This document shows, piece after piece, positions 12,669-62,579 of a stretch of 64,000 bases of DNA. Position 1 is the stretch's first letter; each line of letters begins with the position of its first letter. This DNA is from Haliotis rufescens. Lineage: Eukaryota. Made by a program: the position numbers and the translations under genes. A model generated the notes under the pieces. It worked only from the letters and a program-made list of their open reading frames with translations. It made no database searches and had not been told where the DNA came from. The stretch is from the NCBI RefSeq assembly GCF_023055435.1, contig NW_025963846.1, positions 4,278,001 to 4,342,000 on the forward strand. Reading direction: 5' to 3'.

Positions 12669-15600
12669 TCAGCCAACCAGTGTGCCCACCATAGCCGCCA
12701 TAGCCGCTTCCTTCTTGAGGTGCTGCAACATAGGTTAGCATAGGATATATAGATATACGATGACAGACTGAACTCCGAGCTCCAGATAAGCGTTTGGTGT
12801 TGTGGTGTTTTACCCATGCATTTTAAAATTATTGGGTACCAGTAATTCTATCTGGGTATTCAAATTTCTGTTACCCACTAGTTTTTACACATGTGGGTAT
12901 TTAAGTTAAATATTTAAAAACACTATTCATCTAGTCCCTGCAAACTGGTGTCGTGTGGGTTCGAGAGCTTTATAGGACTCAAAAATAATCACGATACTTC
13001 CACAAGAAAGTGTGATGACCAATGATCAAGATGTAACTGTCATCGTGGAGTTTGGCAAGGTTGACGGAATGCCAGTCTATAATTTCAAAATAAGTTGCTG
13101 ATTTGCTAATCGAATACGCAGGGTTACTTGACAATATTTTGATGATACGCACAAGTTTTATTTTTGTAGCGTATCTGTAATGTTCGTTGCTTATTTGATA
13201 CGCTTGGATCTTATTTTACTGCATATTTCTGCATTTCTGATGCGTATTTTACGCAGATACGCAGCTTATCTGGGGCTCCGTGAACTGCTCTCAACATTGT
13301 GTTACAGTTATATGTGGGAGGACGTGACGTTTATCGCTCTGGCGACTTCTACGGATATCAATAGTGCATAACCAGGGCGAATCTGGGATTCGAACCCATG
13401 ACAAGCGATTCCTGGCAGCTTAAGAACCCTTCAGAACGAATTGTGGCACATTAGACAGGGACCATGTTTAAGTAAGTTCACGCNNNNNNNNNNNNNNNNN
13501 NNNNNNNNNNNNNNNNNNNNNNNNNNNNNNNNNNNNNNNNNNNNNNNNNNNNNNNNNNNNNNNNNNNNNNNNNNNNNNNNNNNNNNNNNNNNNNNNNNNN
13601 NNNNNNNNNNNNNNNNNNNNNNNNNNNNNNNACATAAGTGTTTTAGTCAATTGAAGAATACATATTTCATACATTTATCATTATTAGTGTTGGTGTTACA
13701 TGTTACATATTCTATCAATATTACTGAAGGCATTGAGTGAATAAGAACGTAGCAACGGATGCGTTTGAACTCCAAACACAATACAAGATCACACAGAGAA
13801 GCGTTAATGTGAAACAAGACGATGTGGGTTTTGCTTACCTCCTCCACCAGATGGTTGAACTCTTTAGCCTGATCAGCATCGACATCTGAAATTGGAATAT
13901 GAGATATTGTTATCATCTATTGGTCGGTGTTGTCGATGGGATAAGCTGATAAATTTTTAAGCTCCAATGATCGATGCAACGTACACTTGATAACAATATG
14001 ATTGCATTAGGATTCCAATAATTTTAGACATGGACGTTTGTGTTAATAAATAAAAGCTACAAAACCCTTTCCATATTCATAAGAAATCTCTGTCAAAAGC
14101 ATTTTACGATTCCGACTATATCATGAGAATGTGTTTGTGAATCACTATCATATAGTGATGACACAAGGTGGTCGAGAAAAGGTGAGGGTATCCTGCCCTA
14201 CCGGTGGAACCCGTCACAAACAGTTTGAAGATAAGTATTAAGTGGAACAGGGTTATGTCCTGCCTCATCTGGCAAGAAGAACCTGCTGTAACTTTATCAA
14301 CTGGAGGGGGGAGAACTGGATTGACGGATATCAAATTGATATGTGTTTTTTAGTAAGGTTTCTTTGAGACAAAAAGCCAATCTTGAATCAATACCTATAG
14401 TTCATTACATTCTTCTCAAGACCTCTGCAATTCTATTGTATAACGTTTTATGGATTCATGGTGCTTCCCCAGGAGGTGTATCATATGAACGTGAGGGAGA
14501 CTTTGTATTGCTTCTATTGGTGTCATGTGGAGATGTGGAGTTGGAGATGGACCTCTATGGGATCTCTAAAGTAGAGGTGGCCTTTGGTGGTGGTGCTTGC
14601 AGTTGCTCTTATTGCTGCTTTTGTCGTAATAATTTTTGTTGTTGTTGTTAGAAATCCGTGAAGATCCGGGGTATTAGGTCTTCAGCAATCCATGCTTGAC
14701 GTAAAAGGCTGTTTGTCGTAAGAGGCAACTAACGGGATCGGTGGTCAGGCTCGCTGACATGCAAGTCATCGATCCAAGTTGGGTAGATCGATGCTCATGA
14801 TATCAACCACTGTATTGTCTGGTCCAGACTCGATTATTTACAGACCGCCTTCATATAGCTGGAATATTGCTGAGTGCGGCGTTAAACAACAAACAAACAA
14901 ACTGAGAGACATACAAGTAAGCCTATCCACTTACTGGACATTAACAGCAAGACTGCACTGTATCCCTTTGAGGCGATGTATTGGGTGAGTTGATCGTGCT
15001 GCGCGGCGAACATCATCTCGATAAATATCTGCTTGTCGATGTCATTGAGGTCTTCCAAAATCAAGTTGATGATGTGTAGATCCTTCATAAAGCTGAACAA
15101 GTCTTGCTGACTTTGACGTTTCTGTGTATAAAGGAGTATTGTCATTGCAATGTCATTATATATACTACTTAAAATAAGTTAAAGAACACCCGATTCTTTC
15201 ATATTACTATAGTTAACCTGTCATGGCATGGCAGTACATTTTCCAACCGAGTTTCAATAACATATCACCGCTATTAGCTGCAATATTACCGATGCGGCGT
15301 AATAGCAATATTAGCCCACTCATTTCATGGACGCCGGAATATTATTTCATAGAGGTTTCAGGGTGGTTACATAACAGATCGCCGTGACATACCGGTGGCT
15401 GAAATATTGCTGACTGGGGCGTCAACTACAAAACAGAAAGCAAACAAAACCCAATTTCTAAATTTTTAATCCGTCGCTGACTCAGAGATGTGTTGCACAA
15501 TTACAGTTGAACTTCTTACCTTAGATATGGCCCCAGGTGTCGAGAGAATGCCTGGTGTCGTGAGTATGTCAGATGTTGGGGACACAGCATCTACGAACCC

Positions 15601-18600
15601 AGGCCTCAAGTGCTGAAAAGATATACATGTATGATCTTGTTGGAGTGTAGCTATTGTCCCATGCCTCACCAGCCGTTAGGTATCGATATGTTTCTTTTTG
15701 TATCGAGATTATATACATTTTAGCTACAGCAACAAAACCAGGTACTTTTTGGTTTAAAATTTTGCGCCTGAATTTGTCAACAATGACAGTTTGGTATCAG
15801 GCAATGTCTGCAATAACAGTAAGCTATGTTGGTCTCACACTGGGGATTCCGGGCAAGAACAGGTCACAAATAACCTATGCTGGTCTCACACTGGGGATTC
15901 CTGGCAGGAACAGGTCCCCAGTAACCTATGCTGGTCTCACACTGGGGATTCCTGGCAAGAACAGGTCCCAAATAACCTATGCTGGTCTCACACTGGGGAT
16001 TCCGGGCACGAACAGGTCCCCAGTAACCTATGCTGGTCTCACACTGGGGATTCTTGGCAGGAACAGGTCCCAAATAACCTATGCTGGTCTCACACTGGGG
16101 ATTCCTGGCACGAACAGGTCCCCAGTAACCTATGCTGGTCTCACCCTAGGGATTCCGGGCAAGAACAGGTCCCAAATAACCTATGCTGGTCTCACACTGG
16201 GGATTCCGGGCAAGAACAGGTCCCCAGTAACCTATGCTGGTCTCACACTGGGGATTCCGGGCAAGAACAGGTCACAAATAACCTATGCTGGTCTCACACT
16301 GGGGATTCCTGGCACGAACAGGTCCCAAATAACCTATGCTGGTCTCACCCTGGGGATTCCTGGCACGAACAGGTCCCCAGTAACCTATGCTGGTCTCACC
16401 CTAGGGGTTCCGGGCAAGAACAGGTCACAAATAACCTATGCTGGTCTCACCCTAGGGATTCCTGGCAGGAACAGGTCCCCAAATTACCTATGCTGGTCTC
16501 ACGCTGGGCATTCCTGGCAAGAACAGGTCCCAAATAACCTATGCTGGTCTCACACTGGGGATTCCGGGCAAGAACAGGTCCCCAGTAACCTATGCTGGTC
16601 TCACCCTAGGGATTCCGGGCAAGAACAGGTCCCCAGTAACCTATGCTGGTCTCACACTGGGGATTCCGGGCAAGAACAGGTCCCAAATAACCTATGCTGG
16701 TCTCACCCTAGGGATTCCTGGCAAGAACAGGTCCCCAGTAACCAATGCTGGTCTCACCCTAGGGATTCCGGGCAAGAACAGGTGCTCAGTAACCTATGCT
16801 GCTTTTAAGAGACGACTGCATAGATCGGATGGTCATCCTCGATGACTTGAGTGGCTACCAGTATCAGTGTCTGGTCCTCACATGGTTATTTACAGGCCGC
16901 CATCACACCTACATCATTACAACCTTTGACCCTTGTTATTGTGTACCCTAATGCGGAGAATGGTTGTTGCTCGTACTATCAACCACCAGTCAGCATGGAT
17001 ACAGCTGTTTCCAGGAAAACTAATGTCGTTTTATTGAGCATGCAGCTGGAGAGGAATGTTATACCTCAAACTTTCTTGTTCAGCTGCTGTAATCTTTGTA
17101 TTGGGACTGACAATAGCCAGGTATTACTTGAATCAATACCGGACCGATTGTCATTTTTAATGTTCGAAAAAGACATAGTTTTTTTTAATTCTTATTTATA
17201 TTTTTCAGAAAGCCTATGTTATATATTCATCCAATAAGTACACCAGGCCATTTTGAATCTTAAAACAGAAAGAGGAGAAAGCAGAATATATAGGAACACG
17301 TTATAGTTATTTATTACTTGACGTGCTGATCAGATGGTATTAATATATTCAGGTTACTGTGGACAAATCCCACACCCGAATCCTCACAGGGATAAACGGT
17401 ACCAGTGGTTACCGACATGCATACCCGTGAAGATCCGGAGTAGAATAGGTCTTCAGCAACCCATGCTTGCCCTAAAAGGCGACTATGCTTGTCGTAAGAG
17501 GCGACTAACAGGATCGGGTGGTCAGGCTCGCTGACTTGGTTGATGCATGTCATCGATCCCAATTGAGGGGATCGATGCTCATGATATTAATAACTGGATT
17601 GTCTGGTCCAGACTTAGTTATTTACAGACCGCCGTCATATAGACGGAATATTGCTGAGTGCGGCGTTAAACAACAAACGAACGTGGCACTGTAAACTAAT
17701 CTGTGTCCCACCCTGGAAGTTACTTATGCAGTACTTACCGCGGACAAGTACCCCTCTAAGTGAGGAATGTCATCTTCATCCAGAACTGAAAGTAACAGTC
17801 TCCATATAGTCTGTTGGATTACCGCAATAGTAATACTAATAAACTAATGAAGCAAGATTTATATAAAGCCTGGTTTCGATCACAAGGTGCTCAACGGCGC
17901 TCACAATATAAACCAATGGGCAACAGAAAGTATACACTTGAAATTTGGATTTGATCAAGAAATTACAAACGTTATCAAAACGTTACTAGGCTGAAAACAG
18001 TCGCCGAAAACACTGCAAACTTCAGGTCAAAAACACAACTATGATACCCGATCAAATGCATCACCATCGAATAACCATGTCTTGTAAGTTTTTGTCCCTG
18101 AGTATTTTTAAACATGGCGTCATATCCCTACGTCATATCCCAAAGTGGTAAACGTCTGATTCCTTCATCACTTCGGGCTCTCCTCCCACATTAAGCTGAC
18201 AAGCCGCGATATAACTGGAATACTGTTAAAAGCGGCGTTAAACACAACTCACCCACTCACTAACTCGTAAACGTTCATCCGTCTGTAATTGACAACCGGT
18301 TACGTTTTCGTTTGAAACGTTGATACCACTCGGCTCACCCCTATTACGTCATCTCACAGCACATGGAGGAGTCCATTTTGGAACTAGTCTTAGTCACGTG
18401 ACTATCACACGACACGACAGTATCTGACGCAGACTCGCCTCTAACATAAAATGTTAAAAGTCTTCGTATGTAGCTTTTGATTATTATTAGACATACTTTA
18501 GGCTGTTTTCAAAACCGGCCGTCATGTTGTACGAACATTATTAGGCGGGATCCGTCAGTAATTGGAATACGGTGAAATTATCTGATATCACTACACTTGT

Positions 18601-18913
18601 GTTTTCCGTGGTATTAAGGTGGAGGAAAAGGCCGAATGAACCCGAGTGTACACTGATACCTACGGTCAAAGAGTTCGAGAAGCTTGACAAATCCGATTTG
18701 ATCTATTAGAGCAGTCAGTTCGGTCGTTCCTTGCACGGCCGCCGACACCAGGCTGTTGAAGAGAGTCTGTGAATCACCAGGCAACCTCTTGAAGTCGTCA
18801 CTATCCCGTATCTCGTTCAGATAGTCGACGAATAATGACGAGTTGGTGTAGTCGTGATGTTGGTCTGCCACGACGGCCACCACAAGGAGAGCAGTAACGA
18901 GTACAAACTTCAT
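12669..18913 (-). CDS. Secreted two-domain helical pro-protein, paralog A (225 aa, unknown family)
   Basis: Exons 18913-18664, 17785-17739, 15612-15520, 15121-14935, 13885-13839, 12722-12669; all GT-AG, 678 nt in frame. MKFVLVTALLVVAVVA|DQHHDY...DEDDIPHLEGYLSAHL-(S/T/P linker)-KKR|QSQQDLFSFMKDL...HLKKEAAMAAMVGTLVG*. AATAAA at 12629-12624. Homologous to B and C. An N gap lies in the last intron. Confidence 0.88.
13484..13631. other. Assembly gap (N run)
   Basis: Ns. Confidence 1.
13975..14220 (-). mobile_element. Penelope-like element 3' fragment
   Basis: Similar to 23560-23700 (caaaaccctttc.atattcat...aatcactatca.a.agtgatgacac). Confidence 0.55.
14655..14901 (+). mobile_element. Family B retroposon
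   Basis: ccgtgaagatccggggg...gtcgtaagaggc.actaacggg...gcggcgttaaacaacaaacaaac. Confidence 0.85.
15820..16800 (+). repeat. Minisatellite, 51-bp unit, ~19 copies, in an intron of gene A
   Basis: Unit ctggggattccgggcaagaacaggtccccagtaacctatgctggtctcaca; explains ORFs 15654-16808 and 15791-16537. Confidence 0.95.
17423..17682 (+). mobile_element. Family B retroposon, full length
   Basis: acccgtgaagatccggagtagaataggtcttcagcaacccatg...gcggcgttaaacaacaaac. Confidence 0.9.
18140..18265 (+). mobile_element. 5'-truncated SINE family D
   Basis: Matches the 3' half of 39101-39364. Confidence 0.75.
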
Positions 18914-22755: not shown

Positions 22756-22802
22756 CCTATTGATCAGCTGATCAAAGCCGTGGGCTTCATCATGGTCAAT
22801 TT
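22756..22802 (-). pseudogene. Orphan 47-nt exon of the secreted-protein family (relic fifth paralog)
   Basis: cag|aa att gac cat gat gaa gcc cac ggc ttt gat cag ctg atc aat agg|gtac = IDHDEAHGFDQLINR, versus gene B exon QIDSDESHGFDLLIMR. Flanked by the same 38-bp minisatellite and by sequence (22600-22705) homologous to the gene B intron at 36770-36865. Confidence 0.8.
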
Positions 22803-22827
22803 CTGCCGCAAAGGTTAAAAAATGTCA

Positions 22828-23180
22828 ACTGCAGGAGGTTCTGGATAGCGCTATACTGAAGAGCAATTGCGGAAGGCTCTGTATAGCGCTATACTGAAGC
22901 ACAACGGGAGAATGTTCCAGATAGCGCTATACTGAAGAGCAACTGCATGAGTTAAGGATAGCGCTATACTGAAGAGCAACTGCATTAGTTCTGGATAGCG
23001 CTATACTGTAGAGCAACTGCGGAAGGTTCTGAATAGCGTTTTAATGAAGAGCAATTGCGGGAAGTTCTGGATAGCGCTATACTGAAAAGAAACGGGGGAA
23101 GGTACCGGATAGCGTTATACTGAAGAGCAACGGGAGGAGTTTCCGGATAGCGCAATATTGAAGAGCAACAGAGGAGGTTC
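22828..23180. repeat. 38-bp minisatellite (ggatagcgctatactgaagagcaact...)
   Basis: Tandem units; the same family occurs in the equivalent introns of genes B and C. Confidence 0.9.
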
Positions 23181-23539
23181 TAGTTAAGGAGGCTGTAACG
23201 TTTATAAATAGTTATCCGATTTATTTTTTCAAAACAAGACATTTTTATCTATTTAATCTTTAGTAAAGAGAATGTCTTTTAACGCATCAGTCAGCACTAT
23301 TTCAACTTCATTACGACGGCTTCTTAATTACTGAGTATGGGCCAGACAACCGAGGATTAACAGGATGAACAAAACTTGTCATCACGGGAAGGATGGCGCC
23401 AATAAGCCAGGTCGCCGGGCTTTGGAAATATCTGTGAGTGGGTTGGACGTGCGAAGGAGCTAGGGCAAGTCAGAGTGTTCTGCTGGTGTTATTACGACAG
23501 CTTTTTCTTATCTTCCACGTAGATCGTATTAAGTTGAAG

Positions 23540-31182: not shown

Positions 31183-34100
31183 ATGATGAAGTTCCTGATT
31201 GTTGCTTTGGTAGCAATGACTGCCGTCATTGCCGACCACCATCACGACTACAAAGACCCTTCTAAATTCGCCGACTGGCTGAAGGATGTGCAGAAGAGCC
31301 ACGAGTTCGCTCACATGACGCCAGAAGATAAGCTCCTCTACAGTCAACTCACCCAGGCTGCCGAACAGGGAAGTGCCGCCCTCACAACCTTCATCGATAG
31401 CCAGACCTTCGACAAGATTGTTGGCCTCATTGATCGTATGTTTATATGTTTGACCATGTGTATGCTCATGGACACTAATTACACACAACCATGGCTCAGA
31501 TGGACACTTATTACACACAACCATGGCTCAGATGGACACTTATTACACACAACCATGGCTCAGATCGACACTAATTACACACTACCCTGGCTCAGATGGA
31601 CACTTATTACACACAACCATGGCTCAGATGGACACTTATTACACGAAACCATGGCTCAGATGGACACTAATTACACACTACCCTGGCTCAGATGGACACT
31701 AATTACACACAACCATGGCTCAGATGGACACTTATTACACACAACCATGGCTCAGATATGGACACTTATTTCACACAACCATGGCTCAGATGGACACTAA
31801 TTACACACTACCCTGGCTCAGATGGACACTAATTACACACAACCATGGCTCAGAGGGACACTTATTACACACAACCATGGCTCAGATGGACACTGATTAC
31901 ACACTACCCTGGCTCAGATGGACACTAATTACACACAACCATGGCTCAGATGGACACTTATTACACACAACCATGGCTCAGATGGACACTTATTACACAC
32001 TACCCCGGCTCAGATGGACACTTAATACACACAACCATGGCTCAGATGGACACTAATTACACACAACCATGTCTCAGATATGGACACTAATTACACACAA
32101 CCATGGCTCAGATATGGACACTAATTACACACAACCATGGCTCAGATATGGACACTTATTTCACACAACCATGGCTCAGATATGGACACTAATAACACAC
32201 TACAATGGCTCAGATGGACACTAATTACACACAACCATGGCTCAGATGGACACTTATTACACACAACCATGGCTCAGATGGACACTTATTACACACAACC
32301 ATTGCTCAGATATGGGCACTTATTACACACAACCATGGCTCAGATGGACACTTATTACACGAAACCATGGCTCAGATGGACACTTAATAGACACAAACAT
32401 GGCTCAGATGGACACTAATTACACACAACCATGGCTCAGATGGACACTTATTACACACAACCATGGCTCAGATGGACACTGATTACACACAACCATGGCT
32501 CTGATATGGACACTTATTACACACAACCATGGCTCAGATGGACACTGATTACACACAACCATGGCTCAGATGGACACTTATTACACACAACCATGGCTCA
32601 GATGGACACTAATTACACACAACCATGGCTCAGATGGACACTTATTACACACAACCATGGCTCAGATGGACACTAATTACACACAACCATGGCTCAGATG
32701 GACACTTATTACACACAACCATGGCTCAGATGGACACTTATTACACACAACCATGGCTCAGATGGACACTTATTACACACAACCATGGCTCAGATGGACA
32801 CTTATTACACACAACCATGGCTCAGATGGACACTAATTACACACAACCATGGCTCAGATGGACACTTATTACACACAACCATGGCTCAGATGGACACTAA
32901 TTACACACAACCATGGCTCAGATGGACACTTATTACACACAACCATGGCTCAGATGGACACTGATTACACACAACCATGGCTCTGATATGGACACTTATT
33001 ACACACAACCATGGCTCAGATGGACACTGATTACACACAACCATGGCTCAGATATGGACACTAATTACACACAACCATGGCTCAGATGGACACTAATTAC
33101 ACACAACCATGGCTCAGATGGACACTTATTACACACAACCATGGCTCAGATGGACACTAATTACACACAACCATGGCTCAGATGGACACTTATTACACAC
33201 AACCATGGCTCAGATGGACACTGATTACACACAACCATGGCTCTGATATGGACACTTATTACACACAACCATGGCTCAGATGGACACTGATTACACACAA
33301 CCATGGCTCAGATATGGACACTAATTACACACAACCATGGCTCAGATGGACACTGATTACACACAACCATGGCTCAGATCGACACTAATTACACACAACC
33401 TTGTCTCAGATGGACACTGATTACACACAACCTTGTCTCAGATGGACAATAATTACACACAACCATGTCTCTGATCGACACTAATTACACACAACCTTGT
33501 CTCAGATGGACACTAATTACACACAACCATGGCTCTGATCGACACTAATTACACACAACCTTGTATCAGATGGACACTGATTACACACAACAATGGCTCA
33601 GATATGGACACTAATTACACACAACCTTGTCTCAGATGGACACTGATTACACACAACAATGGCTCAGATATGGACACTAATTACACACAACCATGTCTCT
33701 GATCGACACTAATTACACACAACCTTGTCTCAGATGGACACTAATTACACACAACCATGTCTCTGATCGACACTAATTACACACAACCTTGGCTCAGATG
33801 GACACTAATTACACACAACCATGGCTCTGATCGACACTAATTACACACAACCTTGTATCAGATGGACACTAATTTCAACGCCGATATAAGACCGAACGTG
33901 CGTTCGGGGCAATAGATTATTGTCCTCCTTTAAAACATTTTACCCATATTGAATATTTATATATGCACAGCAATGAATGTTATTATCAGTTCGGATGACC
34001 GACAATAGGCATTTGACAGGTAAACGTTTGTTAGACAAATAATCCCCCCAAACATATCAAACTCCAGATAATAAGATCAAACTCCAGAGAATAAGTATCG

Positions 34101-35517
34101 ATTCCTTACTTACAAACAATACAGAATCTGACAACCTATAACCCTATATCCCTCTCCACCATCCTCATGACGTTGAAATGTAGCACGCATGTATGATGTA
34201 TCTTCAGATTTCGACGATGACGACATTCCCCACTTTGAAGCGTACCTTGCCTTTGTAAGTACCGTGGTGTTTAGTCTGCTACCCATCATTAAGATCGTAA
34301 GAAATTATATATTGATATGCTGAACAATTGCAAAATTTGTACTTTTATCTTCAACGATCATGACAAAAGTTACATTATTCTGTTTCAGCACCTGCACGGC
34401 ACAATAACCGCAGCTGGCGTGAGTATATGTGCACCAACCTAAGTTTTTGTGGTTATAATTAGTCATTAAGGAAGACAAATAATACAGTATGTTATACCAA
34501 AGAATAATATCTAACCGTTATAACTGTGGTATATTTTAGTTATGATATAGTTTATATTTATATACTTTTATTGCATATTCTTTTGTTTTTTTTGGTACAA
34601 TCGAAATAGTAGAATTGTTAAAATAGCGTCCTACTGCTGGATGTTGATCATGATCATGTTCGTACCAACTATATTATAGTGTGTATTAAGGGGAGACGGG
34701 TGGGCATGTCCGTTGTGTAAAGACTGTTCAAATTGTGTACTCATCTGCCAGTTTATTTGGTTTTACAGACATTTGTTTTAACTTTGGATTCTAATATGAA
34801 GCTGTCCTACCAAGATATAACTAAACTACTGTTCAAACCAAACTTAACAACACACTTGGGGCACCCCACCCCATCATATACGTGCTGGGGCTGCCAATTG
34901 GCCCGGGTCTAGGCCGTCTATAAACTTAACTTATTCGATCAATTATTCTTCACGTAAAACCACGATGTTTCCTATCTTTGATCAGAAGCGACAGAGTGGC
35001 TCAGACCTGTTCAGTTTCCTGAGGGACCTTCACCTTATGCACAAGATCGAGGACGATCTCTCCCATTCTGACATGCGAGTGTTCTTGGAGATCATGTTCG
35101 CCGCTGAACACGACACTCTCACCCAATACATTGACAAGAAGGGCTACGGCCCCGTCCTGGACCTCATGTCACGTAGGTATTTGATGTACAACTGCTGTAT
35201 ACAGTGAGTAGGGATATCCAATATCTACCCAATCTCGTCATGGTCTTAGAGGACCGCCGCCGTGGTCTAGTGGTAGAGCGTCCGCCCGGAGAGCGGAAGG
35301 TCCGGGGTTCGATCCCCGGCCGCGTCATACCAAAAGACGTTAAAGGATGATACTTGTTGTTGCAATGTCTGGCGCTCGACATTAAGGGGCTAAACAAGGA
35401 CTGGTTGACTCGGAGTCAGTATACAGTGTCTGAGTGGGGTATTCATGTTAAACTGCGGCATGGTATCTCAGTGGGCTAGTACTATACATCGGCATCAGTC
35501 CGGACTAGTACAAGCAG

Positions 35518-35556
<39 letters not shown>

Positions 35557-37208
35557 GCTATATAGCTATATATTGCTATGCAATAATCTTCGACGCGACG
35601 TTAAACCCAATTTCACCTCACCTCATGGTCTTATAGAATGAGATTTCGAGAATTGCCACCTCTGCAACTAAGTAGGATCTGTATTGAAGATGAGAACAAG
35701 GGGACATCTCCCTACTCTTCTTATGTCACATTGACACCAGTAGAACACTATTTATTCGGCTTGCTCCATTTACTCTTTCTAAACTCTGTCCCGAACTCCC
35801 CCATTCACACTTCAGTATAACGCTACCCGGAAACTCTTGCAGTTGCTCTTCAATATAGCTATACAAAACCTCCTTCCGTTGCTCATCAATATAACGCTAC
35901 CGGGAACCTTTTCCAGTTGCTCTTTCAGTATAACGCAGTCCGACACCTCCATCTGTTGCTCTTCAGTATAAGGCTGTGTGGCACCTCTTCCAATTGCTCC
36001 TCAGTATTCCGTTGCCCGTAACGTCCTTCCGCTGCTCCTCATTATAACGCTGCCGGAATCTCCTGAATCTCCTGAATTTGGCTTTGAAGGGGACTCACGT
36101 CATTGTTCATATATATTAAACTTTTGTTGCAGAAATTGATAGCGATGAATCCCATGGCTTTGATCTGCTGATCATGAGGGTAAGGACACACATACATATT
36201 GTTTAAACACATTTATTGGATATTATATTAAAAAGGATTATATAGGACTTCCTCTATTTTACAACAGCACAGCAGGTTTTGGCCGTTTCACTATACATAC
36301 CACATGACGATGGAATAAAACAAACTTTTTTTGATATTACACAAAGTCATTATTAGTACTATTTACCTAGGTTCATTTATAAATCAGGATGGCACGTTCC
36401 CCACTTTAGACAGGACAATATAGCAGGACAGGAATTTCGTCTTCAACACTTTTTGTACAGTCAAACATGTTCTTTCTTCCATTGGGAGGCTGCTGTATCG
36501 TCCTGTCTCCAAGTGTATTGGAGCAGTGCCACACCCGAATTAGCCAGTGGGCTTCTGTGGGGTCGGGGGTTAAGACGTTTCAGGCAAACATCTTCTAGGT
36601 TTTTTTTAATGAATTTTGAAATTCCAATTTCTTTTCCTGTTTATGGTCTTGTTTATGTTTATATTTATTTCCACGAAGAAGTAGTTTGTGTGAGAACTAA
36701 CAAGCACACGATACAGTTATCCTAACATTCTTACATCAACAGCTAGTTCAACGGTCACATCTTCCCAGATGCCCCTCTCCTTCAACAAATACTGTTAACT
36801 CCGCGATGGCGTTTCCTGTCAAAATAAAAATCAGCCAGATTATTTTTCTTGCAGACAGGAACACATTGCTTTCATGTTACGTGAAACTTGAATAATCTGA
36901 ATACGATATCACACATTGTGCAAAGTAACCATAGACCAGGCACAAAGGTAAACCCATCACGAACGTACTTAAAGAAAGCTTTTGCAGTTCATTTTGTGTA
37001 TTTCATTCGACTCCAAGTAGGGAGAAACGGGAACATATGAATCAGAAGAGAAAGAAGATTGGTGTTGATGGAATTGCTAATTTGCCAGAGTCTGATTCCC
37101 TAATAATCGTTTATCTTTGCCGTATTTCAGCATCTGGAACATGAGGCTGCGATGTCACAAATGAAATCTACTGTCGGCACCAACGTTGTCAGCACAGTCA
37201 TCGTCTGA
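31183..37208 (+). CDS. Secreted two-domain helical pro-protein, paralog B (213 aa, unknown family)
   Basis: Exons 31183-31435, 34208-34254, 34389-34418, 34986-35172, 36133-36179, 37131-37208; GT-AG, 642 nt in frame. MMKFLIVALVAMTAVIA|DHHHDYKDPSKF...HFDDDDIPHFEAYLAFHLHGTITAAGKR|QSGSDLFSFLRDL...QIDSDESHGFDLLIMRHLEHEAAMSQMKSTVGTNVVSTVIV*. Confidence 0.9.
31467..33874. repeat. 32-bp minisatellite (atggacactaattacacacaaccatggctcag), ~75 copies, in the first coding intron of gene B
   Basis: Direct tandem repetition with 34-bp variants; explains the many repetitive ORFs at 31715-33388. Confidence 0.97.
35252..35622 (+). mobile_element. tRNA-derived SINE family C with internal (CA)n, specific to the gene B intron
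   Basis: A box gtggtctagtggtagagcg, B box ggttcgatcccc; TSD-like tcatggtctta on both sides; absent from the paralogous intron of C. Confidence 0.9.
35808..36060. repeat. Diverged 38-bp minisatellite in a gene B intron
   Basis: Reverse complement of the units at 22828 and 46735. Confidence 0.8.
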
Positions 37209-38499
37209 ACAAGTCCACTACATGGATAGTTCGCCTGCATCCTACATACTACTGGTAATAATATTAAGGTCATATTATGAACAGATGCTTGGTATGACAT
37301 TTTGTACTAGCCAATCGGTTGTGACGTCATGAACAATATATTATCTTCAATTGCTTGCGATTGTGCGTTCATCAGCCAATCGGCTTGAATCGACAATCAT
37401 AATGTTCTGTGAGAATGCAGAAAATACTTTCACCTATAGCCGTGCATATATCCATGAAAATGGCATTGTATAATCAGATTAGATTAGATCTGAGATGTAT
37501 ATGAGAGATGAAATTATAATCAGAATGAGGAATAAATTATGTTGTGCTTGGATGATGTTGTTAGGGATTTGAAAGTATAAAATGCCTCTAGTAAATGTTT
37601 ATTCAAATTTGTAATTCGATATAACTGTTTTCTTTGCAGATGTACCATTGGCAGTTGTGAATAAAATGAGTATAAAGATTGGTTTTACTTTTGTCAGTGT
37701 GTTCATCGGATGTCACTTGTGTCAGATATATCATTATAGTGGGGCGGTTAAGGCTGGATTTTAGTCAAAATTGTGCACTTTGGGTTCAAAGCACCAAACT
37801 TGGCACACTCATACATTGAAACATTCCGAACATTTCTGGATATGGATCCACCTCAGCAGCGCCACCTTGTGGTAGAAAATCCAAGATGGCTAAATCTTTT
37901 ATGACGTCAATTTATATTCAATATATCATCATTATTTTGTCAATTTAAGTCATTTATATAAATTTAATTGCGTCAATGTTGTATACAATTCAAATCTAAT
38001 ATGCAGCGCCCACTGGTGGCGAAGATAATCCAAGATGGCCGCCCAAATGACTTAATCTTCAAAAAATGTTAAATGTTTGTCCACAATATCAGTATCATTT
38101 GCTAATTGCAATCATTTTAATCAAATCTGGCTTTAAAACAATTCCAAGTAATGCTTTACTGAATATATAAGCTTTTGGTACTAAAATTCATTCATTTGAA
38201 GCAAGATCCGTATTCAGTAAGGCAGATCCGGGGAATATATTGGTACTGCATGAATTTGATTAAAATTCTGTAACTGAACTTGGAATGTGATAAAGATATT
38301 GGACCAGCACTGAAACATGCCTTTTTGATTCTGAATCATTAAGGCTAACTAAACGAGCAACACTTATCCACAGACGTGATTTAAGGTTGAAACAAACTTT
38401 TAGAGGAACATTTCCTTCTGACTGCCATAAACAGTATGTACCTGACTCTTTGAAAGCTCTAGTCAGTATGAAATAAAAATCTTCGAGCATTAAAAACTA

Positions 38500-45794: not shown

Positions 45795-48700
45795 TCAAAC
45801 CACAACTGGAGCAGCAGTGCTGGCCATTGGGGCAGCCGTGCTGGCCATAACTGGAGCAGGTGTGCTGACCATTGGAGCAACCGTGCTGTCCATAACTGGA
45901 GCAGGTGTGCTGACAACGATGGCGCCGACAGTAGTTTTCATTTGTGACATCGCAGCCTCATGTTCCAGATGCTGAAATATGGGAAAGGATACAAAGGATT
46001 TAGGGGCTGGCAGTCCCACCCAAATCCACTTTCTTTCTATTCTAATTCATATGTTTCTATTCTTCCAAAGCGTTAGAGTCATATGGAATACACACAAAAT
46101 GATCTGTAAAAGCTTTCTTTAAGCAGGCTCGTCTAAGGTTCCTTTGCACAATGATTCTGTATTCAAATTAAGACAATAAAGATAAGAAACTGGAATTTCA
46201 AATTTCATAAAAAAACTGTTTTAATATATTTTGCATTGTGTCAGAGGTGAAGGTTTTACAGTTTAGCTGTGTGTATAAACGAGTGGAATATGATTATTAC
46301 ACGCGATGAGGACAGTAATGTCACATTGTATTCTAATTATAGAACTGTATTTGGCGCCCACGATTATGACACACGCCCTATCCCCCGATCCCACAGAGGC
46401 GCACTGGCAAATTCACTGCTCCAATGTGGCACTGCTGCAATACGCTTACAGACAAGACGTTAAAGCAACCTCCCAATTTAAGAACATGTTTGAACTGTAC
46501 AGAGACTCAGTATCCTATAATTCCGTATCGAGTTACCAGCTTGTTTCACATATTCTGTTTACCATTTTTATTGTTATATTTTGGATGTGACAACCTGTCT
46601 GTGTGTCCTTACCCTCATGAGCAGCTTATCAAAGTTGCGAGTTTGATCTTTATCAATTTCTGAAACAAAAAAATTGAAAATAATTAATCAATTGACAAAG
46701 ACATCATTCCTCTTCAAAGTCACATTCAGGAGGTTCCGGGTAGCGTTACACTGAAGAGCAATTAGTAAAAGGTTTGGGATAGCGCTCTACTAAAGAGCAA
46801 TGGGAAGAGGTTTGGGATAGCGCTATACTAAAGAGCAATGGGAAGAGGTTTGGGATAGCGCTATACAAAAGAGCAATGGGAAGAGGTTTGGGGAAGCGTT
46901 ACACTTAAGAGCAATGGGAAGAGGTTTGGGATAGCGCTATACTAAAGAGCAATGGGTAGAGGTTTGGGATAGTGGTATACTAAAGAGCAATGGGAAGAGG
47001 TTTGGGATAGCGCTATACTAAAGAGCAATGGGAAGAGGTTTGGGATAGCGCTATACTAAGAGCAATGGGAAGAGGTTTGAGATAGCGGTATACTAAAGAG
47101 CAATGGGAAGAGGTTGGTATAGCGCTATACTAAAGAGCAATGGCAAGAGGTCCCGGATACTGAAGAGTTTGTTTGCTCTTTAACGCCACACTCGGCAGTA
47201 TTCCAGCTATATGACTGCACTTTACACTGACGAGTAAAGGGTGGAAGCCGTGTCATTGTGTATAGCGCTATACTGAAGAGTAACTGCAATAGTTTCCGGG
47301 TACCGTTATACTGAAGGATAGAGGAAGGAAGTTCCGGACAGAGTAAAGAGAGCAAGCCGAATCATAGTGTTCTACTGGTGTCAATGTGACATAACAAGAG
47401 TAGGGAGATGCGCGTTAGTTCTCTTCTTAAACACAGAGGCTTTTAATTTGATGAGGTGGCAATTCTAAATCTCATTATAAGACCATGGCTAGATTAGTAG
47501 ATATTGGGTATTCCAAACAGCTGTATACATTAGTTGTGCATCATATACCTACGTGACATGAGGTCCAGGACGGGGCCGTAGCCCTTATTGTCAATGTATT
47601 GGGTGAGCGTGTCGTGTTCAGCGGCGTACATGATCTCCAGGAAGACCCGCATATCTGAATGGGAGAGATGTTCCTCCACCTTGTGCATAAGGTGAAGATC
47701 CCTAAGGAAGCTGAACAGGTCTGAGCCACTCTGTCGCTTCTGATTAACGAAAGAAAACATCTATACTTTTTTGTCCTTTTTTAAATCTAAAACAATATAT
47801 GAGTGAATTAGTTCAGTTTAAAGGCAAACTAGCCTCAAGATAATTGCCAGGCCAAGCATTTATGTGACTGCTTCCCCCCTCCCCTCCGCGCCCCCAGTGA
47901 GTGAGTGAGGTTGGTTTGAACAGTATTTCAGTAATGTCTCAGTTATGTTACATATACTTCTTTGGTATGAAAAACTTATTTTTGTCATTTAATGACTTAT
48001 TATAACCACTAAAACTTAGGTTTGTGCCCATATACTCACGACAGGTGCGGTTGTTGTTGTGCCCTGCAGGTGCTGAAAGAGATTAGTATTGACAATATCA
48101 TTGCAGATATAAATACAAATTATTTCAATGTCTTACGATCTTAATGATAGGCAGCAAAACAAGCACAACGGTACTTACAGCGGCTAGGTAACCTTCAAAG
48201 TGGGGAATGTCGTCCTTGTCCAGATCTGAGGACATATCAAACATACGGGCTACATTTCAACTTCAGCAAGATATATATCAGCGGATATCGAGCTATTATA
48301 ACATTTCGAAGACATATTTTATGGATGATATATAGGTTGTTATGAAAAGTGTCAAAGAACAACGATGGAGGTAGCTGAACACAGGTAAGATGGTCATTAT
48401 ACAAATGTGAGACACTGCCGAAAACCATAGACTATTTTAAGAACGCGTGTTCACTATAGTTTTTGGCAAGCGAAATGTGTCGGCAGATAATGAAGGCTAA
48501 TTATTCTCTGGTATTGACGTTAGATATTTTGGGAACAATTTTTCGGAATGATTTAATCAGTTTTCTAGGACTGCCGATTGTTCCTACATGAAAGAGCATA
48601 TACATGGACATAAATGTAGACATACGATCAATGAGGCCAATAATCTTGTCGAAGGTCTGGCTATTGATGAAGGTTGTGAGGGCGGCACTTCCCTGTTCGG

Positions 48701-48878
48701 CAGCCTGGATGAGTTGACTGTAGAGAAGCTGATTTTCTGGCGTCATGTGAGCGAACTCGTGGCTCTTCTGCACATCCTTCAGCCAGCCGGCGAATTTAGA
48801 AGGGTCTTTGTAGTCGTGGTGGTCGTTGGCAATGACCGCAGTCATTGCTACCAAAGTAACAATCAGGAGATTCATCAT
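45795..48878 (-). CDS. Secreted two-domain helical pro-protein, paralog C (247 aa, with mucin-like C-terminal repeats)
   Basis: Exons 48878-48626, 48225-48179, 48072-48040, 47739-47553, 46659-46613, 45971-45795; GT-AG, 744 nt in frame; close paralog of B; tail STPAPVMDSTVAPMVSTPAPVMASTAAPMASTAAPVVV*. Confidence 0.9.
46735..47340. repeat. 38-bp minisatellite (gggatagcgctatactaaagagcaatgggaagaggttt), homogenised, in a gene C intron
   Basis: Direct tandem repetition. Confidence 0.93.
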
Positions 48879-52448: not shown

Positions 52449-52610
52449 NNNNNNNNNNNNNNNNNNNNNNNNNNNNNNNNNNNNNNNNNNNNNNNNNNNN
52501 NNNNNNNNNNNNNNNNNNNNNNNNNNNNNNNNNNNNNNNNNNNNNNNNNNNNNNNNNNNNNNNNNNNNNNNNNNNNNNNNNNNNNNNNNNNNNNNNNNNN
52601 NNNNNNNNNN
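52449..52610. other. Assembly gap (N run)
   Basis: Ns. Confidence 1.
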
Positions 52611-53190
52611 CCGATATAGTAAAATGGTATAGCCATTTACAGTTAACATAGACCAGCATTGTGGCATACTCTCGATTTGTTCCTAAAAGGTGCACGCTAA
52701 GAGTTGCAAGCTCCGGTCTTTGAGGAGAGTGTGAGATACATTCCACAGAGAGACCGTCTTGTTTGCATTGCTGAGAGTCGCCAGATGGACTGATGTCTGT
52801 GTAGGTGGTCTAGTTACATGGAACACACATGATACACACATGAAGCGTCATCAGGTTTTTGATGAGTCATTTGAGATTAACCTATCTTCACGAACAAGCG
52901 TGAGTGAGTGAATGTTGTCAAAAGCCGCAGATGACAATATTCCAGCTCTATCACAGCGGTATGTTAAGAATCGAATCAGGCCTCAGTAAAGCTTTCAAAA
53001 CGTTTTATGGTAGACATGTGGAGGACATTTCCAAATTTGACGCATCAGTGACAAAAAATGATGTCCGATGCAATTTCCTAGTTTGACTTGTACCATATGT
53101 TCCCGATTTTCCCCGACTTTTCGCGAACTCCTGGTATCATTACTATCTGATAATTGTAGAAGAGTCTCAAGTTGTCTGCTCATTCCATGG
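52611..53190 (+). repeat. Left arm of an inverted repeat with 61490-62431 (includes a Penelope 3' fragment)
   Basis: Reverse-complement identity, e.g. 52650-52900 versus 62040-62300 and 52980-53190 versus 61490-61716. Confidence 0.85.
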
Positions 53191-61489: not shown

Positions 61490-62431
61490 GCCCATGGAAT
61501 GAGCAGACAACTTGAGACAGTTCATCAAACTCTTCTACAATTATCAGATAGTAATGATACCAGGAGTTCGCGAAAAGTCGGGGAAAAACGGGATCATATG
61601 GTACAAGTCAAAATAGGAAATTGCATCGGACATCATTTTTGTCACGGATGCGTCAAATTTGGGAATATCCTCCACATGTCTACCATAAAATGTTTTGAAA
61701 GCTTTGCTGAGGCCTTGAATGTTGTAACCTTGACCAAACAACTTCTGAGCAAGAGTCGTATGATGATCTTTGAAATCTTTGCGGCAAGTGCATGCTCGAT
61801 TGTATCTCAAACATTTACTGGAATATTGCTCGACGTGAAGGGAAAGTTGACTATTGGAAAGTTGAGTCATCCCTCTTGTCATACAGTCTTGTATGGCGAT
61901 AGGTCAACGTGTCCTGATGGCGTGAATTGTTGCCCATGCAGTCAACCTCTAGTCTGTCTGACCCAGATTCGATTCTTAATATACCGCTGTGATAGAGCTG
62001 GAATACTGCATCTGAGGCTTTCGACAACATTCACTCACTCACGCGTGTTCGTGAAGATAGATTAATCTCAAATGACTCATCAAAAACCTGATGACGCTTC
62101 ATGTGTGTATCATGTGTGTTCCATGTAACTAGACCACCTACACAGACATCAGTCCATCTGGCGACTCTCAGCAATGCAAACATGACGGTCTCTCTGTGGA
62201 ATGTACCTCACACTCCCCTCAAAGACCGGAGCTTGCAAAACTCTTAGTGTGCACCTTTTAGGAACAAATCGAGAGTATGCCACAATGCTGGTCAATGTTA
62301 ACTTCTCGTTAAAGGTTCCCACTTCCTTGAATTTTGTACAAGAGCATAAGGTTTAAAATCTGTATTTCATATCTACTCAATAGGTTGAATTTTAGATATG
62401 TTTAGCAGACTATACCATTTTACTTTATCGG
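61490..62431 (-). repeat. Right arm of the inverted repeat; Penelope-like C-terminal fragment at 61490-61870
   Basis: RACTCRKDFKDHHTTLAQKLFGQGYNIQGLSKAFKTFYGRH; reverse complement of 52611-53190. Confidence 0.85.
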
Positions 62432-62437
62432 TGATCA

Positions 62438-62579
62438 NNNNNNNNNNNNNNNNNNNNNNNNNNNNNNNNNNNNNNNNNNNNNNNNNNNNNNNNNNNNNNN
62501 NNNNNNNNNNNNNNNNNNNNNNNNNNNNNNNNNNNNNNNNNNNNNNNNNNNNNNNNNNNNNNNNNNNNNNNNNNNNNNN
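62438..62579. other. Assembly gap (N run)
   Basis: Ns. Confidence 1.

What the first reader, a model, noticed from the sequence alone, without database searches (positions are those of the whole stretch)
34389..35172. Conserved KR|Q processing site splits each precursor into two homologous subunits
Seen: in A, B and C the second-domain exon begins exactly with Lys-Arg-Gln-Ser (15121, 34986, 47739), after a variable S/T/P-rich linker exon (93, 30, 33 nt). Established: KR is a prohormone-convertase site, and an exposed N-terminal Gln is cyclised to pyroglutamate. Inference: a polyprotein released as two ~9-11 kDa folded proteins through the regulated secretory pathway, possibly as a heterodimer. 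This is unusual because the products are folded domains rather than short neuropeptides.
Basis: partly seen in the sequence, partly recalled or inferred. Interest (0 to 1): 0.8.

Follow-up and report, generated by a model that had tools for sequence, protein, structure and literature searches.

The report
Conserved Lys-Arg site in abalone two-domain proteins
Three neighbouring, very highly expressed abalone genes encode secreted proteins made of two related helical domains joined by a floppy linker that always ends in Lys-Arg, and the same kind of site sits between the domains of distant relatives across molluscs, so the proteins are probably cut into single domains, although nobody has yet shown the cut.

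Summary
Genes A (-, 18913-12669), B (+, 31183-37208) and C (-, 48878-45795) each have six exons with canonical splice sites. Exon 4 begins Lys-Arg-Gln-Ser at 15121, 34986 and 47739, after linker exons of 93, 30 and 33 nt. RNA contigs from four runs confirm every junction of B from exon 1 to exon 6, at depths of thousands against about 10 in the introns.

B and A are identical to RefSeq Haliotis rufescens LOC124144257 and LOC124144258, both "uncharacterized". The domain has no Pfam family and no solved relative by sequence or fold. Two GenBank entries call it "perlucin 2", which is a misnomer.

- **Conservation.** K-R is invariant in 17 Haliotis sequences from six species, while the linker runs from 5 to 29 residues. 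In 16 representative family members (gastropods, oyster, scallop, mussel), 21 of 26 inter-domain junctions carry a dibasic pair, against 4.2 expected.
- **Site context.** Residues after linker sites are Q, D, S, N, E or A. Residues after dibasic pairs inside domains are mostly V, I or L.
- **Exposure.** The site lies in a predicted disordered segment.
- **Autonomy.** A 100-aa single-domain paralogue exists.

Cleavage into two units of about 10-14 kDa is therefore well supported comparatively but unproven. The heterodimer and regulated-pathway ideas are untested. Precedents exist, such as nematode polyprotein allergens. The only earlier scan notes come from this same window.

The parts
31183..31435 (+). 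Gene B exon 1: signal peptide (MMKFLIVALVAMTAVIA) plus most of domain 1; ends in phase 1
   Evidence: The end of this exon is the loose end joined to 34208 in RNA contigs. Identical to P0030 residues 1-84.
34208..34254 (+). Gene B exon 2: 47-nt exon encoding the last helix of domain 1 (FDDDDIPHFEAYLAF)
   Evidence: joint 34254>34389 in four RNA runs
34389..34418 (+). Gene B exon 3: 30-nt linker exon, HLHGTITAAG. The Gly precedes KR, giving a G-K-R amidation-type motif.
   Evidence: joint 34418>34986 in runs X8, X9 and X10. In X19 (another species label) the donor is 9 nt earlier, at 34409.
34986..34991 (+). Gene B Lys-Arg codons (AAG CGA): the proposed processing site, first two codons of exon 4
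   Evidence: These are residues 111-112 of P0030, inside the pLDDT<50 segment 104-116.
34986..35172 (+). Gene B exon 4: KRQS plus most of domain 2; ends in phase 1
   Evidence: RNA contigs cover 34986-35172 with no differences at depth of about 6000
36133..36179 (+). Gene B exon 5: 47-nt exon encoding the last helix of domain 2 (IDSDESHGFDLLIMR)
   Evidence: joints 35172>36133 and 36179>37131
37131..37208 (+). Gene B exon 6: HLEHEAAMSQMKSTVGTNVVSTVIV plus stop
18664..18913 (-). Gene A exon 1: signal peptide plus domain 1
   Evidence: identical to P0037
17739..17785 (-). Gene A exon 2 (47 nt)
15520..15612 (-). Gene A exon 3: 93-nt Ser/Thr/Pro-rich linker ending in Lys, so the site reads K-K-R
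14935..15121 (-). Gene A exon 4: KRQSQQDLFSF...; Lys-Arg codons at 15121-15116 (AAA CGT)
13839..13885 (-). Gene A exon 5 (47 nt)
12669..12722 (-). Gene A exon 6: HLKKEAAMAAMVGTLVG plus stop
48626..48878 (-). Gene C exon 1: signal peptide plus domain 1
48179..48225 (-). Gene C exon 2 (47 nt)
48040..48072 (-). Gene C exon 3: 33-nt linker, HLQGTTTTAPV
47553..47739 (-). Gene C exon 4: KRQSGSDLFSF...; Lys-Arg codons at 47739-47734
46613..46659 (-). Gene C exon 5 (47 nt)
45795..45971 (-). Gene C exon 6: HLEHEAAM... followed by a Ser/Thr/Ala/Pro/Val-rich, mucin-like tail, then stop

Best explanation
**What it is.** A, B and C are tandem paralogues of a mollusc-wide, so far undescribed family of secreted, acidic, His-rich, Cys-free proteins. 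The family is built from a helical domain of about 80 residues. Each window gene encodes a signal peptide, domain 1, a short disordered linker of variable length ending in Lys-Arg, domain 2, and a short or mucin-like tail.

**Proposed mechanism.**
1. Shown: the gene models, splicing and very high expression of B.
2. Shown: conservation of the dibasic pair and its sequence context, and disorder of the linker in the model.
3. Shown: the domain also exists as a stand-alone secreted protein.
4. Inferred: in the secretory pathway a kexin-type proprotein convertase cuts after Lys-Arg. A carboxypeptidase then trims K and R, releasing two single-domain proteins of about 10-14 kDa.
5. Inferred: where Gly precedes KR (B and most Haliotis paralogues), the new C-terminus may be amidated. 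Where Gln follows KR, the new N-terminus may cyclise to pyroglutamate.

**Function of the released domains.** This is unknown. My best guess, at low confidence, is binding of divalent metals through the His-rich segments that start most domains.
For: - **Gene models.** Canonical splice sites in all three genes, and RNA joints for B in four runs. The models are identical to RefSeq proteins P0030 and P0037.
- **Conservation in Haliotis.** K-R is invariant in 17 sequences from H. rufescens, cracherodii, asinina, rubra, discus discus and diversicolor. The linker between them varies from 5 to 29 residues and is barely alignable.
- **Silent changes.** The K, R and Q codons each differ silently between A and B/C.
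- **Distant relatives.** They carry KR, RR or RKR in their linkers: Plakobranchus 6 of 6 junctions, Elysia 3 of 3, Saccostrea RKR|D, Mizuhopecten RR|S, and unnamed gastropod-like transcripts KR|Q and KR|D. In total 21 of 26 junctions have a dibasic pair, against 4.2 expected from composition.
- **P1' residues.** After the 30 linker sites they are Q10, D14, S3, N, E, A. After the 18 dibasic pairs inside domain cores they are V10, I2, L1, G2, S2, T1. From my own knowledge of invertebrate prohormone rules, aliphatic P1' residues disfavour cleavage.
- **Exposure.** In the AlphaFold2 model of P0030 both domains are helical with pLDDT of about 80, while residues 104-116, which include KR at 111-112, fall below 50.
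- **Autonomy.** A natural 100-aa single-domain member exists (P0036). Six further single first exons with their own signal peptides lie elsewhere in the genome.
- **Enzymes.** Convertase P-domain genes and copper monooxygenase genes are present in this genome. Dibasic processing of abalone precursors has been shown by mass spectrometry for neuropeptides (PMC3434067).
Against: - No peptide or protein evidence of cleavage was available.
- Mytilus-type members have K-L-R|D or Q-A-R|D, a single Arg, at the homologous place. Some Batillaria-like members have domains joined with no linker and no basic pair. Covalently linked domains are therefore viable in this family.
- KR abuts the conserved start of domain 2, so within Haliotis its conservation alone could be structural.
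- A bare K-R without Arg at P4 is a poor furin site, so the responsible enzyme and compartment are unknown. The tissue of expression is also unknown, because the run labels are coded.
- The junction counts are not phylogenetically independent. The Plakobranchus repeats are recent copies of each other.
Confidence: 0.65

Rival explanations
1. The protein is secreted and works as an intact two-domain molecule. Lys-Arg is conserved because it belongs to the N-terminal cap of domain 2 or to a binding surface (glycosaminoglycan, mineral or partner), and it is not cut.
For: - Mussel homologues lack the dibasic pair, and some gastropod homologues have domains fused with no linker.
- KR sits only five residues before helix 1 of domain 2.
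- The short 8-9 residue linkers of B and C would let the two domains pack against each other.
- No cleavage data exist.
Against: - The dibasic pair persists in linkers whose other residues and length are not conserved, from vetigastropods to sacoglossans, oyster and scallop.
- In sacoglossans KR lies directly after the preceding domain and before a 20-30 residue Asp/Ser spacer, so it is not a cap of the next domain.
- The P1' pattern separates linker sites from internal sites.
- The site is modelled as disordered.
Confidence: 0.2
2. The precursor is cut at the linker, but not by a granule prohormone convertase. Either a furin-like enzyme cuts it on the constitutive route, or trypsin-like proteases cut it after secretion (for example in gut or mucus). 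The basic pair then simply marks an exposed protease-sensitive hinge.
For: - The very high transcript level (contig depths of 5,000-27,000 against about 10 in introns) suggests a bulk secretory tissue rather than neurons.
- Some relatives have furin-like R-N-K-R or R-K-R.
- Cockroach Bla g 1-type repeat proteins are thought to be cut in the gut (my own knowledge).
Against: - Most sites lack Arg at P4 (A, P, V, I, L or S in Haliotis).
- Gly-Lys-Arg in 9 of 15 Haliotis sequences, and Gln at P1', are typical of granule processing.
- A trypsin-type hinge would not need two basic residues or a non-aliphatic P1'.
Confidence: 0.12
3. The first codons of exon 4 are conserved at the nucleotide level for splicing (acceptor context or exonic enhancer), not for the amino acids they encode.
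For: KR lies exactly at the exon start in all three genes.
Against: - All three of the K, R and Q codons differ at the third position between A and B/C while the residues stay the same.
- Distant relatives keep the dibasic pair in quite different surrounding sequence.
Confidence: 0.03

Closest known systems
Nematode polyprotein allergens/antigens (NPA, e.g. Ascaris ABA-1)
   Same: Both are secreted, Cys-poor, all-helical small domains made as tandem units. The units are released by cleavage at regularly spaced basic motifs. Some NPA units also carry His-rich extensions said to bind zinc (PMC3079579).
   Different: - No sequence or fold similarity was detected.
- NPA sites are furin-type K/R-X-K/R-R, whereas here the site is mostly a bare K-R.
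- NPA arrays have few or no introns, whereas here each unit is a three-exon module.
- There are only two units in Haliotis, and up to seven in Plakobranchus.
- Lipid binding was not tested.
Molluscan neuropeptide and hormone precursors processed at dibasic sites (e.g. Haliotis APGWamide, myomodulin, whitnin)
   Same: They share a signal peptide, K-R or G-K-R sites and polar P1' residues, and would use the same enzyme set. Cleavage of this kind has been demonstrated in abalone by MALDI-MS (PMC3434067).
   Different: The products here would be folded 10-14 kDa domains, not peptides of 4-30 residues. Expression in neurons has not been shown.
GenBank/UniProt entries 'perlucin 2' (H. discus discus B6RAY9, H. 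diversicolor G5CT92)
   Same: They are true members of this same family, 59-66% identical to the H. asinina B/C-type protein P0002. P0032 is 89% identical to gene B's product P0030. Both have KRQS at the same place.
   Different: The name is wrong. They have no C-type lectin domain and no cysteines. A perlucin phylogeny used perlucins 1 and 3-8 but left number 2 out (PMC4019660). Another paper found it grouping apart from the mollusc perlucins (PMC11591584).
Multi-domain precursors of folded inhibitors cut at dibasic sites (locust pacifastin-related precursors); filaggrin
   Same: Several folded units are made from one secreted or stored precursor and released at basic motifs (my own knowledge; filaggrin is mentioned in PMC3079579).
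   Different: Those units are disulphide-rich (pacifastin) or intracellular (filaggrin). There is no homology.

Membership tests
Proprotein-convertase substrate (secreted precursor cut at a dibasic site) | N-terminal signal peptide | tested here: met
   By inspection: MMKFLIVALVAMTAVIA|D, with a hydrophobic core and small residues at -3 and -1, in A, B, C and all full-length relatives. No dedicated signal-peptide predictor was available.
Proprotein-convertase substrate (secreted precursor cut at a dibasic site) | Lys-Arg or Arg-Arg in an exposed segment between folded parts | tested here: met
   KR is residues 111-112 of P0030, inside the pLDDT<50 stretch 104-116 between two helical domains.
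Proprotein-convertase substrate (secreted precursor cut at a dibasic site) | Site conserved among orthologues, paralogues and distant homologues while the surroundings vary | tested here: met
   17 of 17 Haliotis sequences have it. 21 of 26 junctions family-wide have a dibasic pair, against 4.2 expected. Exceptions are the Mytilus type and the linker-less Batillaria type.
Proprotein-convertase substrate (secreted precursor cut at a dibasic site) | Permissive P1' residue (not aliphatic, not Pro) | tested here: met
   P1' after linker sites is Q, D, S, N, E or A in 30 of 30. After dibasic pairs inside domain cores it is V, I or L in 13 of 18.
Proprotein-convertase substrate (secreted precursor cut at a dibasic site) | Convertase genes present in the organism | tested here: met
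   Six P_proprotein (PF01483) matches over the cut-off in the window's genome.
Proprotein-convertase substrate (secreted precursor cut at a dibasic site) | Cleaved products observed | not testable with these tools
   No proteomic data could be searched. Peptide strings were not found in 8.4 million papers or in the supplements of the H. laevigata shell proteome paper.
Perlucin (C-type lectin of abalone nacre) | Lectin_C domain with conserved cysteines | tested here: not met
   No Pfam hit at E<=1 for P0032, P0035, P0030 or P0001. The mature proteins contain no Cys.
DUF4476 (PF14771; the UniRef name of one Mytilus member) | Match to the Pfam model at or above 22.5 bits | tested here: not met
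   There is no DUF4476 hit at E<=10 for that Mytilus protein, P0022. A genome-wide scan with PF14771 hits nothing in this window, best 20 bits elsewhere.
Nematode polyprotein allergen | Homology to the NPA unit (sequence or fold) | tested here: not met
   No Pfam or PDB sequence hit. ABA-1 is not among the fold matches, best Z 5.9 and 8.2 to generic helix bundles.
Insect allergen repeat (Bla g 1, PF06757) | Match to the Pfam model or to the Bla g 1 fold | tested here: not met
   No hit. This was my first guess from memory, and I dropped it.
MgtE_N / FliG-type helical repeat (PF03448) | Match over 25.9 bits with a supporting fold match | tested here: inconclusive
   Weak hits recur in ten members, E 1e-5 to 0.3. 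Only the 7-repeat P0003 reaches 26.1 bits, summed, with no single stretch passing. The Foldseek match to the MgtE soluble part 2oux has E 2.9 and TM 0.22.
ATCUN (amino-terminal Cu/Ni) motif | Free N-terminus with His at position 3 | tested here: inconclusive
   If signal peptidase cuts after ...A, 14 of 15 Haliotis proteins start X-X-H (DHH, DQH, NDH, DDH, NSH, DSH, DNH). Two distant relatives read KR|DSH and KR|EEH. The cleavage points are predictions, and metal binding was not tested.

The most novel reading that the evidence does not exclude
Proteolytic processing creates the active ends of a mollusc-specific class of secreted metal-binding mini-proteins. Signal peptidase, and in many relatives the Lys-Arg convertase cut, would expose X-X-His or His-rich N-termini (ATCUN-like Cu/Ni/Zn sites) on autonomous helical domains of about 80 residues. 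The polyprotein would then be a way to mass-produce metal carriers or histatin-like antimicrobial factors, with an undescribed fold.
Probability: 0.15. Interest if true: 0.65.

Novelty: new member of a known kind. Interest (0 to 1): 0.45.

Why it matters
- The family is among the most abundantly transcribed genes in several abalone RNA data sets. It is spread across gastropods and bivalves, yet it has no Pfam model, no structure, no literature and two wrong database names.
- If the Lys-Arg cut is real, genome annotations describe the wrong mature molecules, and shotgun proteomics with tryptic rules would miss the true termini.
- It would add a lophotrochozoan example, built on an unrelated domain, to the short list of polyproteins that release folded domains, alongside nematode NPAs.
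- It gives a simple, directly testable prediction: two species of 10-14 kDa, a pyroGlu N-terminus and a possible C-terminal amide.

Tried and rejected
**Searches that found nothing**
- Pfam found no family, either on single exons or on 23 family proteins.
- A PDB sequence profile search gave 0 hits at E<=10.
- Foldseek against PDB gave no match at E<=0.001, for the two-domain model or the single-domain model.
- VIA-align wide gave best Z of 5.9 and 8.2 to generic helix bundles. These included copper-storage and Fe-binding bundles, which I do not count as evidence.
- Paper searches for accession numbers, locus names and peptide strings found nothing. The H. laevigata shell-proteome supplements also held nothing.

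**Ideas dropped**
- Bla g 1 and NPA homology, which I had guessed from memory, is not supported.
- The 'perlucin 2' and 'DUF4476' labels are rejected.
- BLASTP of D1 against D2 finds nothing. Their homology rests on hhalign (E 0.01), on transitive profile hits and on the shared exon module.

Queries were single-exon translations or database proteins returned by the searches. Two of those proteins turned out to be identical to the products of genes B and A.

Full report
**What is in the sequence**

The window is eukaryotic, about 40% G+C, and full of minisatellites and SINE-like repeats. The region named in the finding belongs to gene B on the + strand.

I rebuilt three six-exon genes exon by exon. 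All acceptors are AG and all donors are GT.

| Gene | Strand | Exon 1 | Exon 2 | Exon 3 | Exon 4 | Exon 5 | Exon 6 |
|---|---|---|---|---|---|---|---|
| B | + | 31183-31435 | 34208-34254 | 34389-34418 | 34986-35172 | 36133-36179 | 37131-37208 |
| C | - | 48878-48626 | 48225-48179 | 48072-48040 | 47739-47553 | 46659-46613 | 45971-45795 |
| A | - | 18913-18664 | 17785-17739 | 15612-15520 | 15121-14935 | 13885-13839 | 12722-12669 |

Each gene is two copies of one module: a large exon ending in phase 1, a 47-nt exon, and an exon that starts His-Leu. Exon 4 begins K-R-Q-S in all three genes, and the linker exons are 30, 33 and 93 nt. Only 'S/T/P-rich' is loose, because B's linker reads HLHGTITAAG.

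**Transcription and splicing**

Contigs from four public runs, from three studies and three organism labels, were laid on 34150-37250.

- They skip exactly 34254>34389, 34418>34986, 35172>36133 and 36179>37131, each with GT..AG.
- They carry the end of exon 1 as the loose end before 34208.
- Exon bins have depths of 2,000-27,000 in three of the runs (a few hundred in X10), while intron bins have about 0-20.

The runs are therefore RNA, the model of gene B is right, and the gene is very highly expressed. Sample labels are coded, so the tissue is unknown. In run X19, from another species label, the linker exon ends 9 nt earlier (34409) but joins the same KR-initial exon. That gives HLHGTIT-KRQS, which is what the H. 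discus discus protein P0032 reads.

**Identity of the genes**

A profile of the three exon-4 translations was searched against 1.84 billion representatives and found 17 proteins. Two word searches added close relatives.

- P0030 (H. rufescens LOC124144257, 213 aa) is identical to the exon-by-exon translation of gene B.
- P0037 (LOC124144258, 225 aa) is identical to that of gene A.
- The genome is 1.33 Gb in 615 contigs, so the window comes from red abalone or something indistinguishable from it.
- All named relatives are molluscan and 'uncharacterized': Haliotis (six species), Plakobranchus, Elysia, Batillaria, Saccostrea, Mizuhopecten and Mytilus.
- Two entries are called 'perlucin 2'. They have no lectin domain and no cysteine, and perlucin phylogenies omit them or find them misplaced.
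- One UniRef name, 'DUF4476', is not reproduced by Pfam.
- No Pfam family, solved structure or known fold matches.

**The domain and its autonomy**

The AlphaFold2 model of P0030 has two five-helix domains with block pLDDT of about 75-90. It also has three low-confidence stretches: the signal peptide, residues 104-116 and the tail.

D1 and D2 are too diverged for BLASTP, but three lines of evidence tie them together:
- They align in register by hhalign, E 0.01.
- They share the exon module.
- The D2-only profile's best match in the Plakobranchus protein is its first, post-signal domain.

The window holds the only three D2-type exons in the genome. Six more first exons with their own signal peptides lie on two other contigs. 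One of them corresponds to a 100-aa, single-domain H. cracherodii protein, P0036. The domain can therefore exist on its own as a secreted protein.

**Is Lys-Arg more than chance?**

Inside the window the evidence is thin. B and C are recent inverted copies. A against B/C is 60% identical over exon 4, so four matching residues prove little. Four observations make the case.

1. The K, R and Q codons each differ silently between A (AAA CGT CAA) and B/C (AAG CGA CAG).
2. In 17 Haliotis sequences K and R never change and Q changes once. The linker before them ranges from 5 to 29 residues with little similarity.
3. In 16 representative family members, 21 of 26 inter-domain junctions hold a [KR][KR] pair, where residue shuffling predicts 4.2. 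This includes lineages in which nothing else in the linker is alignable:
   - sacoglossans have ...LQSKR followed by Asp/Ser spacers
   - oyster has GRKR|D
   - scallop has FRR|S
   - unnamed transcripts have GPVKR|Q, GPAKR|Q, RNKR|Q and TVKR|D.
4. The residue after linker sites is Q, D, S, N, E or A in 30 of 30 cases. The residue after dibasic pairs inside domain cores is V, I or L in 13 of 18 cases, for example the recurrent E-K-R-V in helix 2 of sacoglossans and F-K-R-L in gene A. By the rules used for invertebrate prohormones (my own knowledge), the former are cut and the latter are not.

These counts include related sequences, so they are not independent events. Even so, the pattern spans gastropods and two bivalve orders.

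**Exceptions**

Mytilus-type proteins have K-L-R|D or Q-A-R|D at the homologous place. Some Batillaria-like proteins have truncated domains joined without a linker. Uncut multi-domain forms are therefore possible in this family.

**Most likely mechanism**

The proteins enter the secretory pathway. A kexin-type convertase cuts after Lys-Arg, and carboxypeptidase removes the two basic residues.

| Gene | Domain 1 | Domain 2 |
|---|---|---|
| B | 10.55 kDa, pI 4.9 | 11.47 kDa, pI 4.8 |
| A | 12.36 kDa | 10.53 kDa |
| C orthologue | 10.5 kDa | 14.0 kDa, plus a likely O-glycosylated tail |

Gly-Lys-Arg in B and in 9 of 15 Haliotis sequences would allow C-terminal amidation. Gln at P1' would allow pyroglutamate. 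Convertase and copper-monooxygenase genes are present in the genome, and abalone neuropeptide precursors are known to be cut at such sites (PMC3434067). All of these steps are inferred. None was observed for this protein.

The huge transcript level, however, suggests a gland rather than neurons. Nothing here bears on a D1-D2 heterodimer, since the two-domain model has pTM 0.51.

**What the domains do**

This is unknown. They are acidic, Cys-free and rich in His. If signal peptidase cuts after the Ala, 14 of 15 Haliotis proteins would start X-X-His, and several distant domains start His-rich directly after KR (DSH, EEH, AHDHH). That resembles amino-terminal Cu/Ni sites, which need a free N-terminus, so it would give processing a purpose. 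I rate this a lead, not a finding. Weak recurrent Pfam hits to MgtE_N and generic four-helix-bundle fold matches add nothing solid.

**Comparison with known systems**

The closest working analogue is the nematode polyprotein allergen. It consists of helical units made in tandem and released at basic motifs, some with His-rich metal-binding extensions (PMC3079579). There is no homology to it, the motif here is a bare K-R, and the units are intron-split modules.

The claim that releasing folded domains is 'unusual' is therefore too strong. What is new is the family itself and the prediction that its annotated products are precursors.

**Limits**

- The earlier notes of this scan (s1-813677, s1-813756) come from this same window. 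They pointed me to the 47-nt exon 5 and to the three-exon module, and I confirmed both.

Noticed in passing
G000 C334:64070605, 64080260, 65034055, 65039408, 65108494 and C235:4260777 (loci L007, L008, L014-L016, L020): Six more first exons of the same domain family, each with its own signal peptide and closer to the bivalve type. The one in L008 corresponds to a 100-aa single-domain H. cracherodii protein (P0036). The family in abalone is therefore larger than the three window genes.
   Followed up: partly
window 31340-33900: A 32-nt minisatellite of about 65 or more copies fills most of intron 1 of gene B. The open frame of exon 1 runs on into it (ORF 31183-31800).
   Followed up: no
window 15661-16930: A 51-nt minisatellite of about 20 copies lies in intron 2 of gene A and carries long spurious ORFs (15654-16808).
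   Followed up: no
window 35252-35625 (tRNA-like 35256-35327): A tRNA-Ser-like SINE sits in intron 4 of gene B. RNA contigs from many other loci pile up here (depth up to 270,000, with many loose ends), so depth in this stretch says nothing about gene B.
   Followed up: partly
window 22762-23206 and 46734-47104: The same 38-nt minisatellite occurs twice. The second copy lies in intron 4 of gene C.
   Followed up: no
window 52463-53165 and 61529-62579: Inverted repeat arms that are 96-97% complementary sit next to the N runs at 52449-52610 and 62438-62579. This is either a large inverted duplication or an assembly feature.
   Followed up: no
P0026 versus P0031 (H. rubra LOC124253041 isoforms X1 and X3): The two annotated isoforms share domain 1 but differ throughout the linker and domain 2. 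This suggests alternative use of a whole second-domain module, or read-through between tandem paralogues.
   Followed up: no
G000 C594 and C545: There are 23 exon matches to the copper type II monooxygenase domain (PF01082), mostly clustered on C594. This looks like a local expansion of that family.
   Followed up: no
P0003 (Plakobranchus) and P0013, P0016 (Elysia-like): Sacoglossan members have up to seven domains. Each KR is followed by a 20-30 residue poly-Asp/Ser spacer (DDDDDDSSGSSGSDDDDD), which looks like a calcium-binding or propeptide-like element. It is absent in abalone.
   Followed up: no
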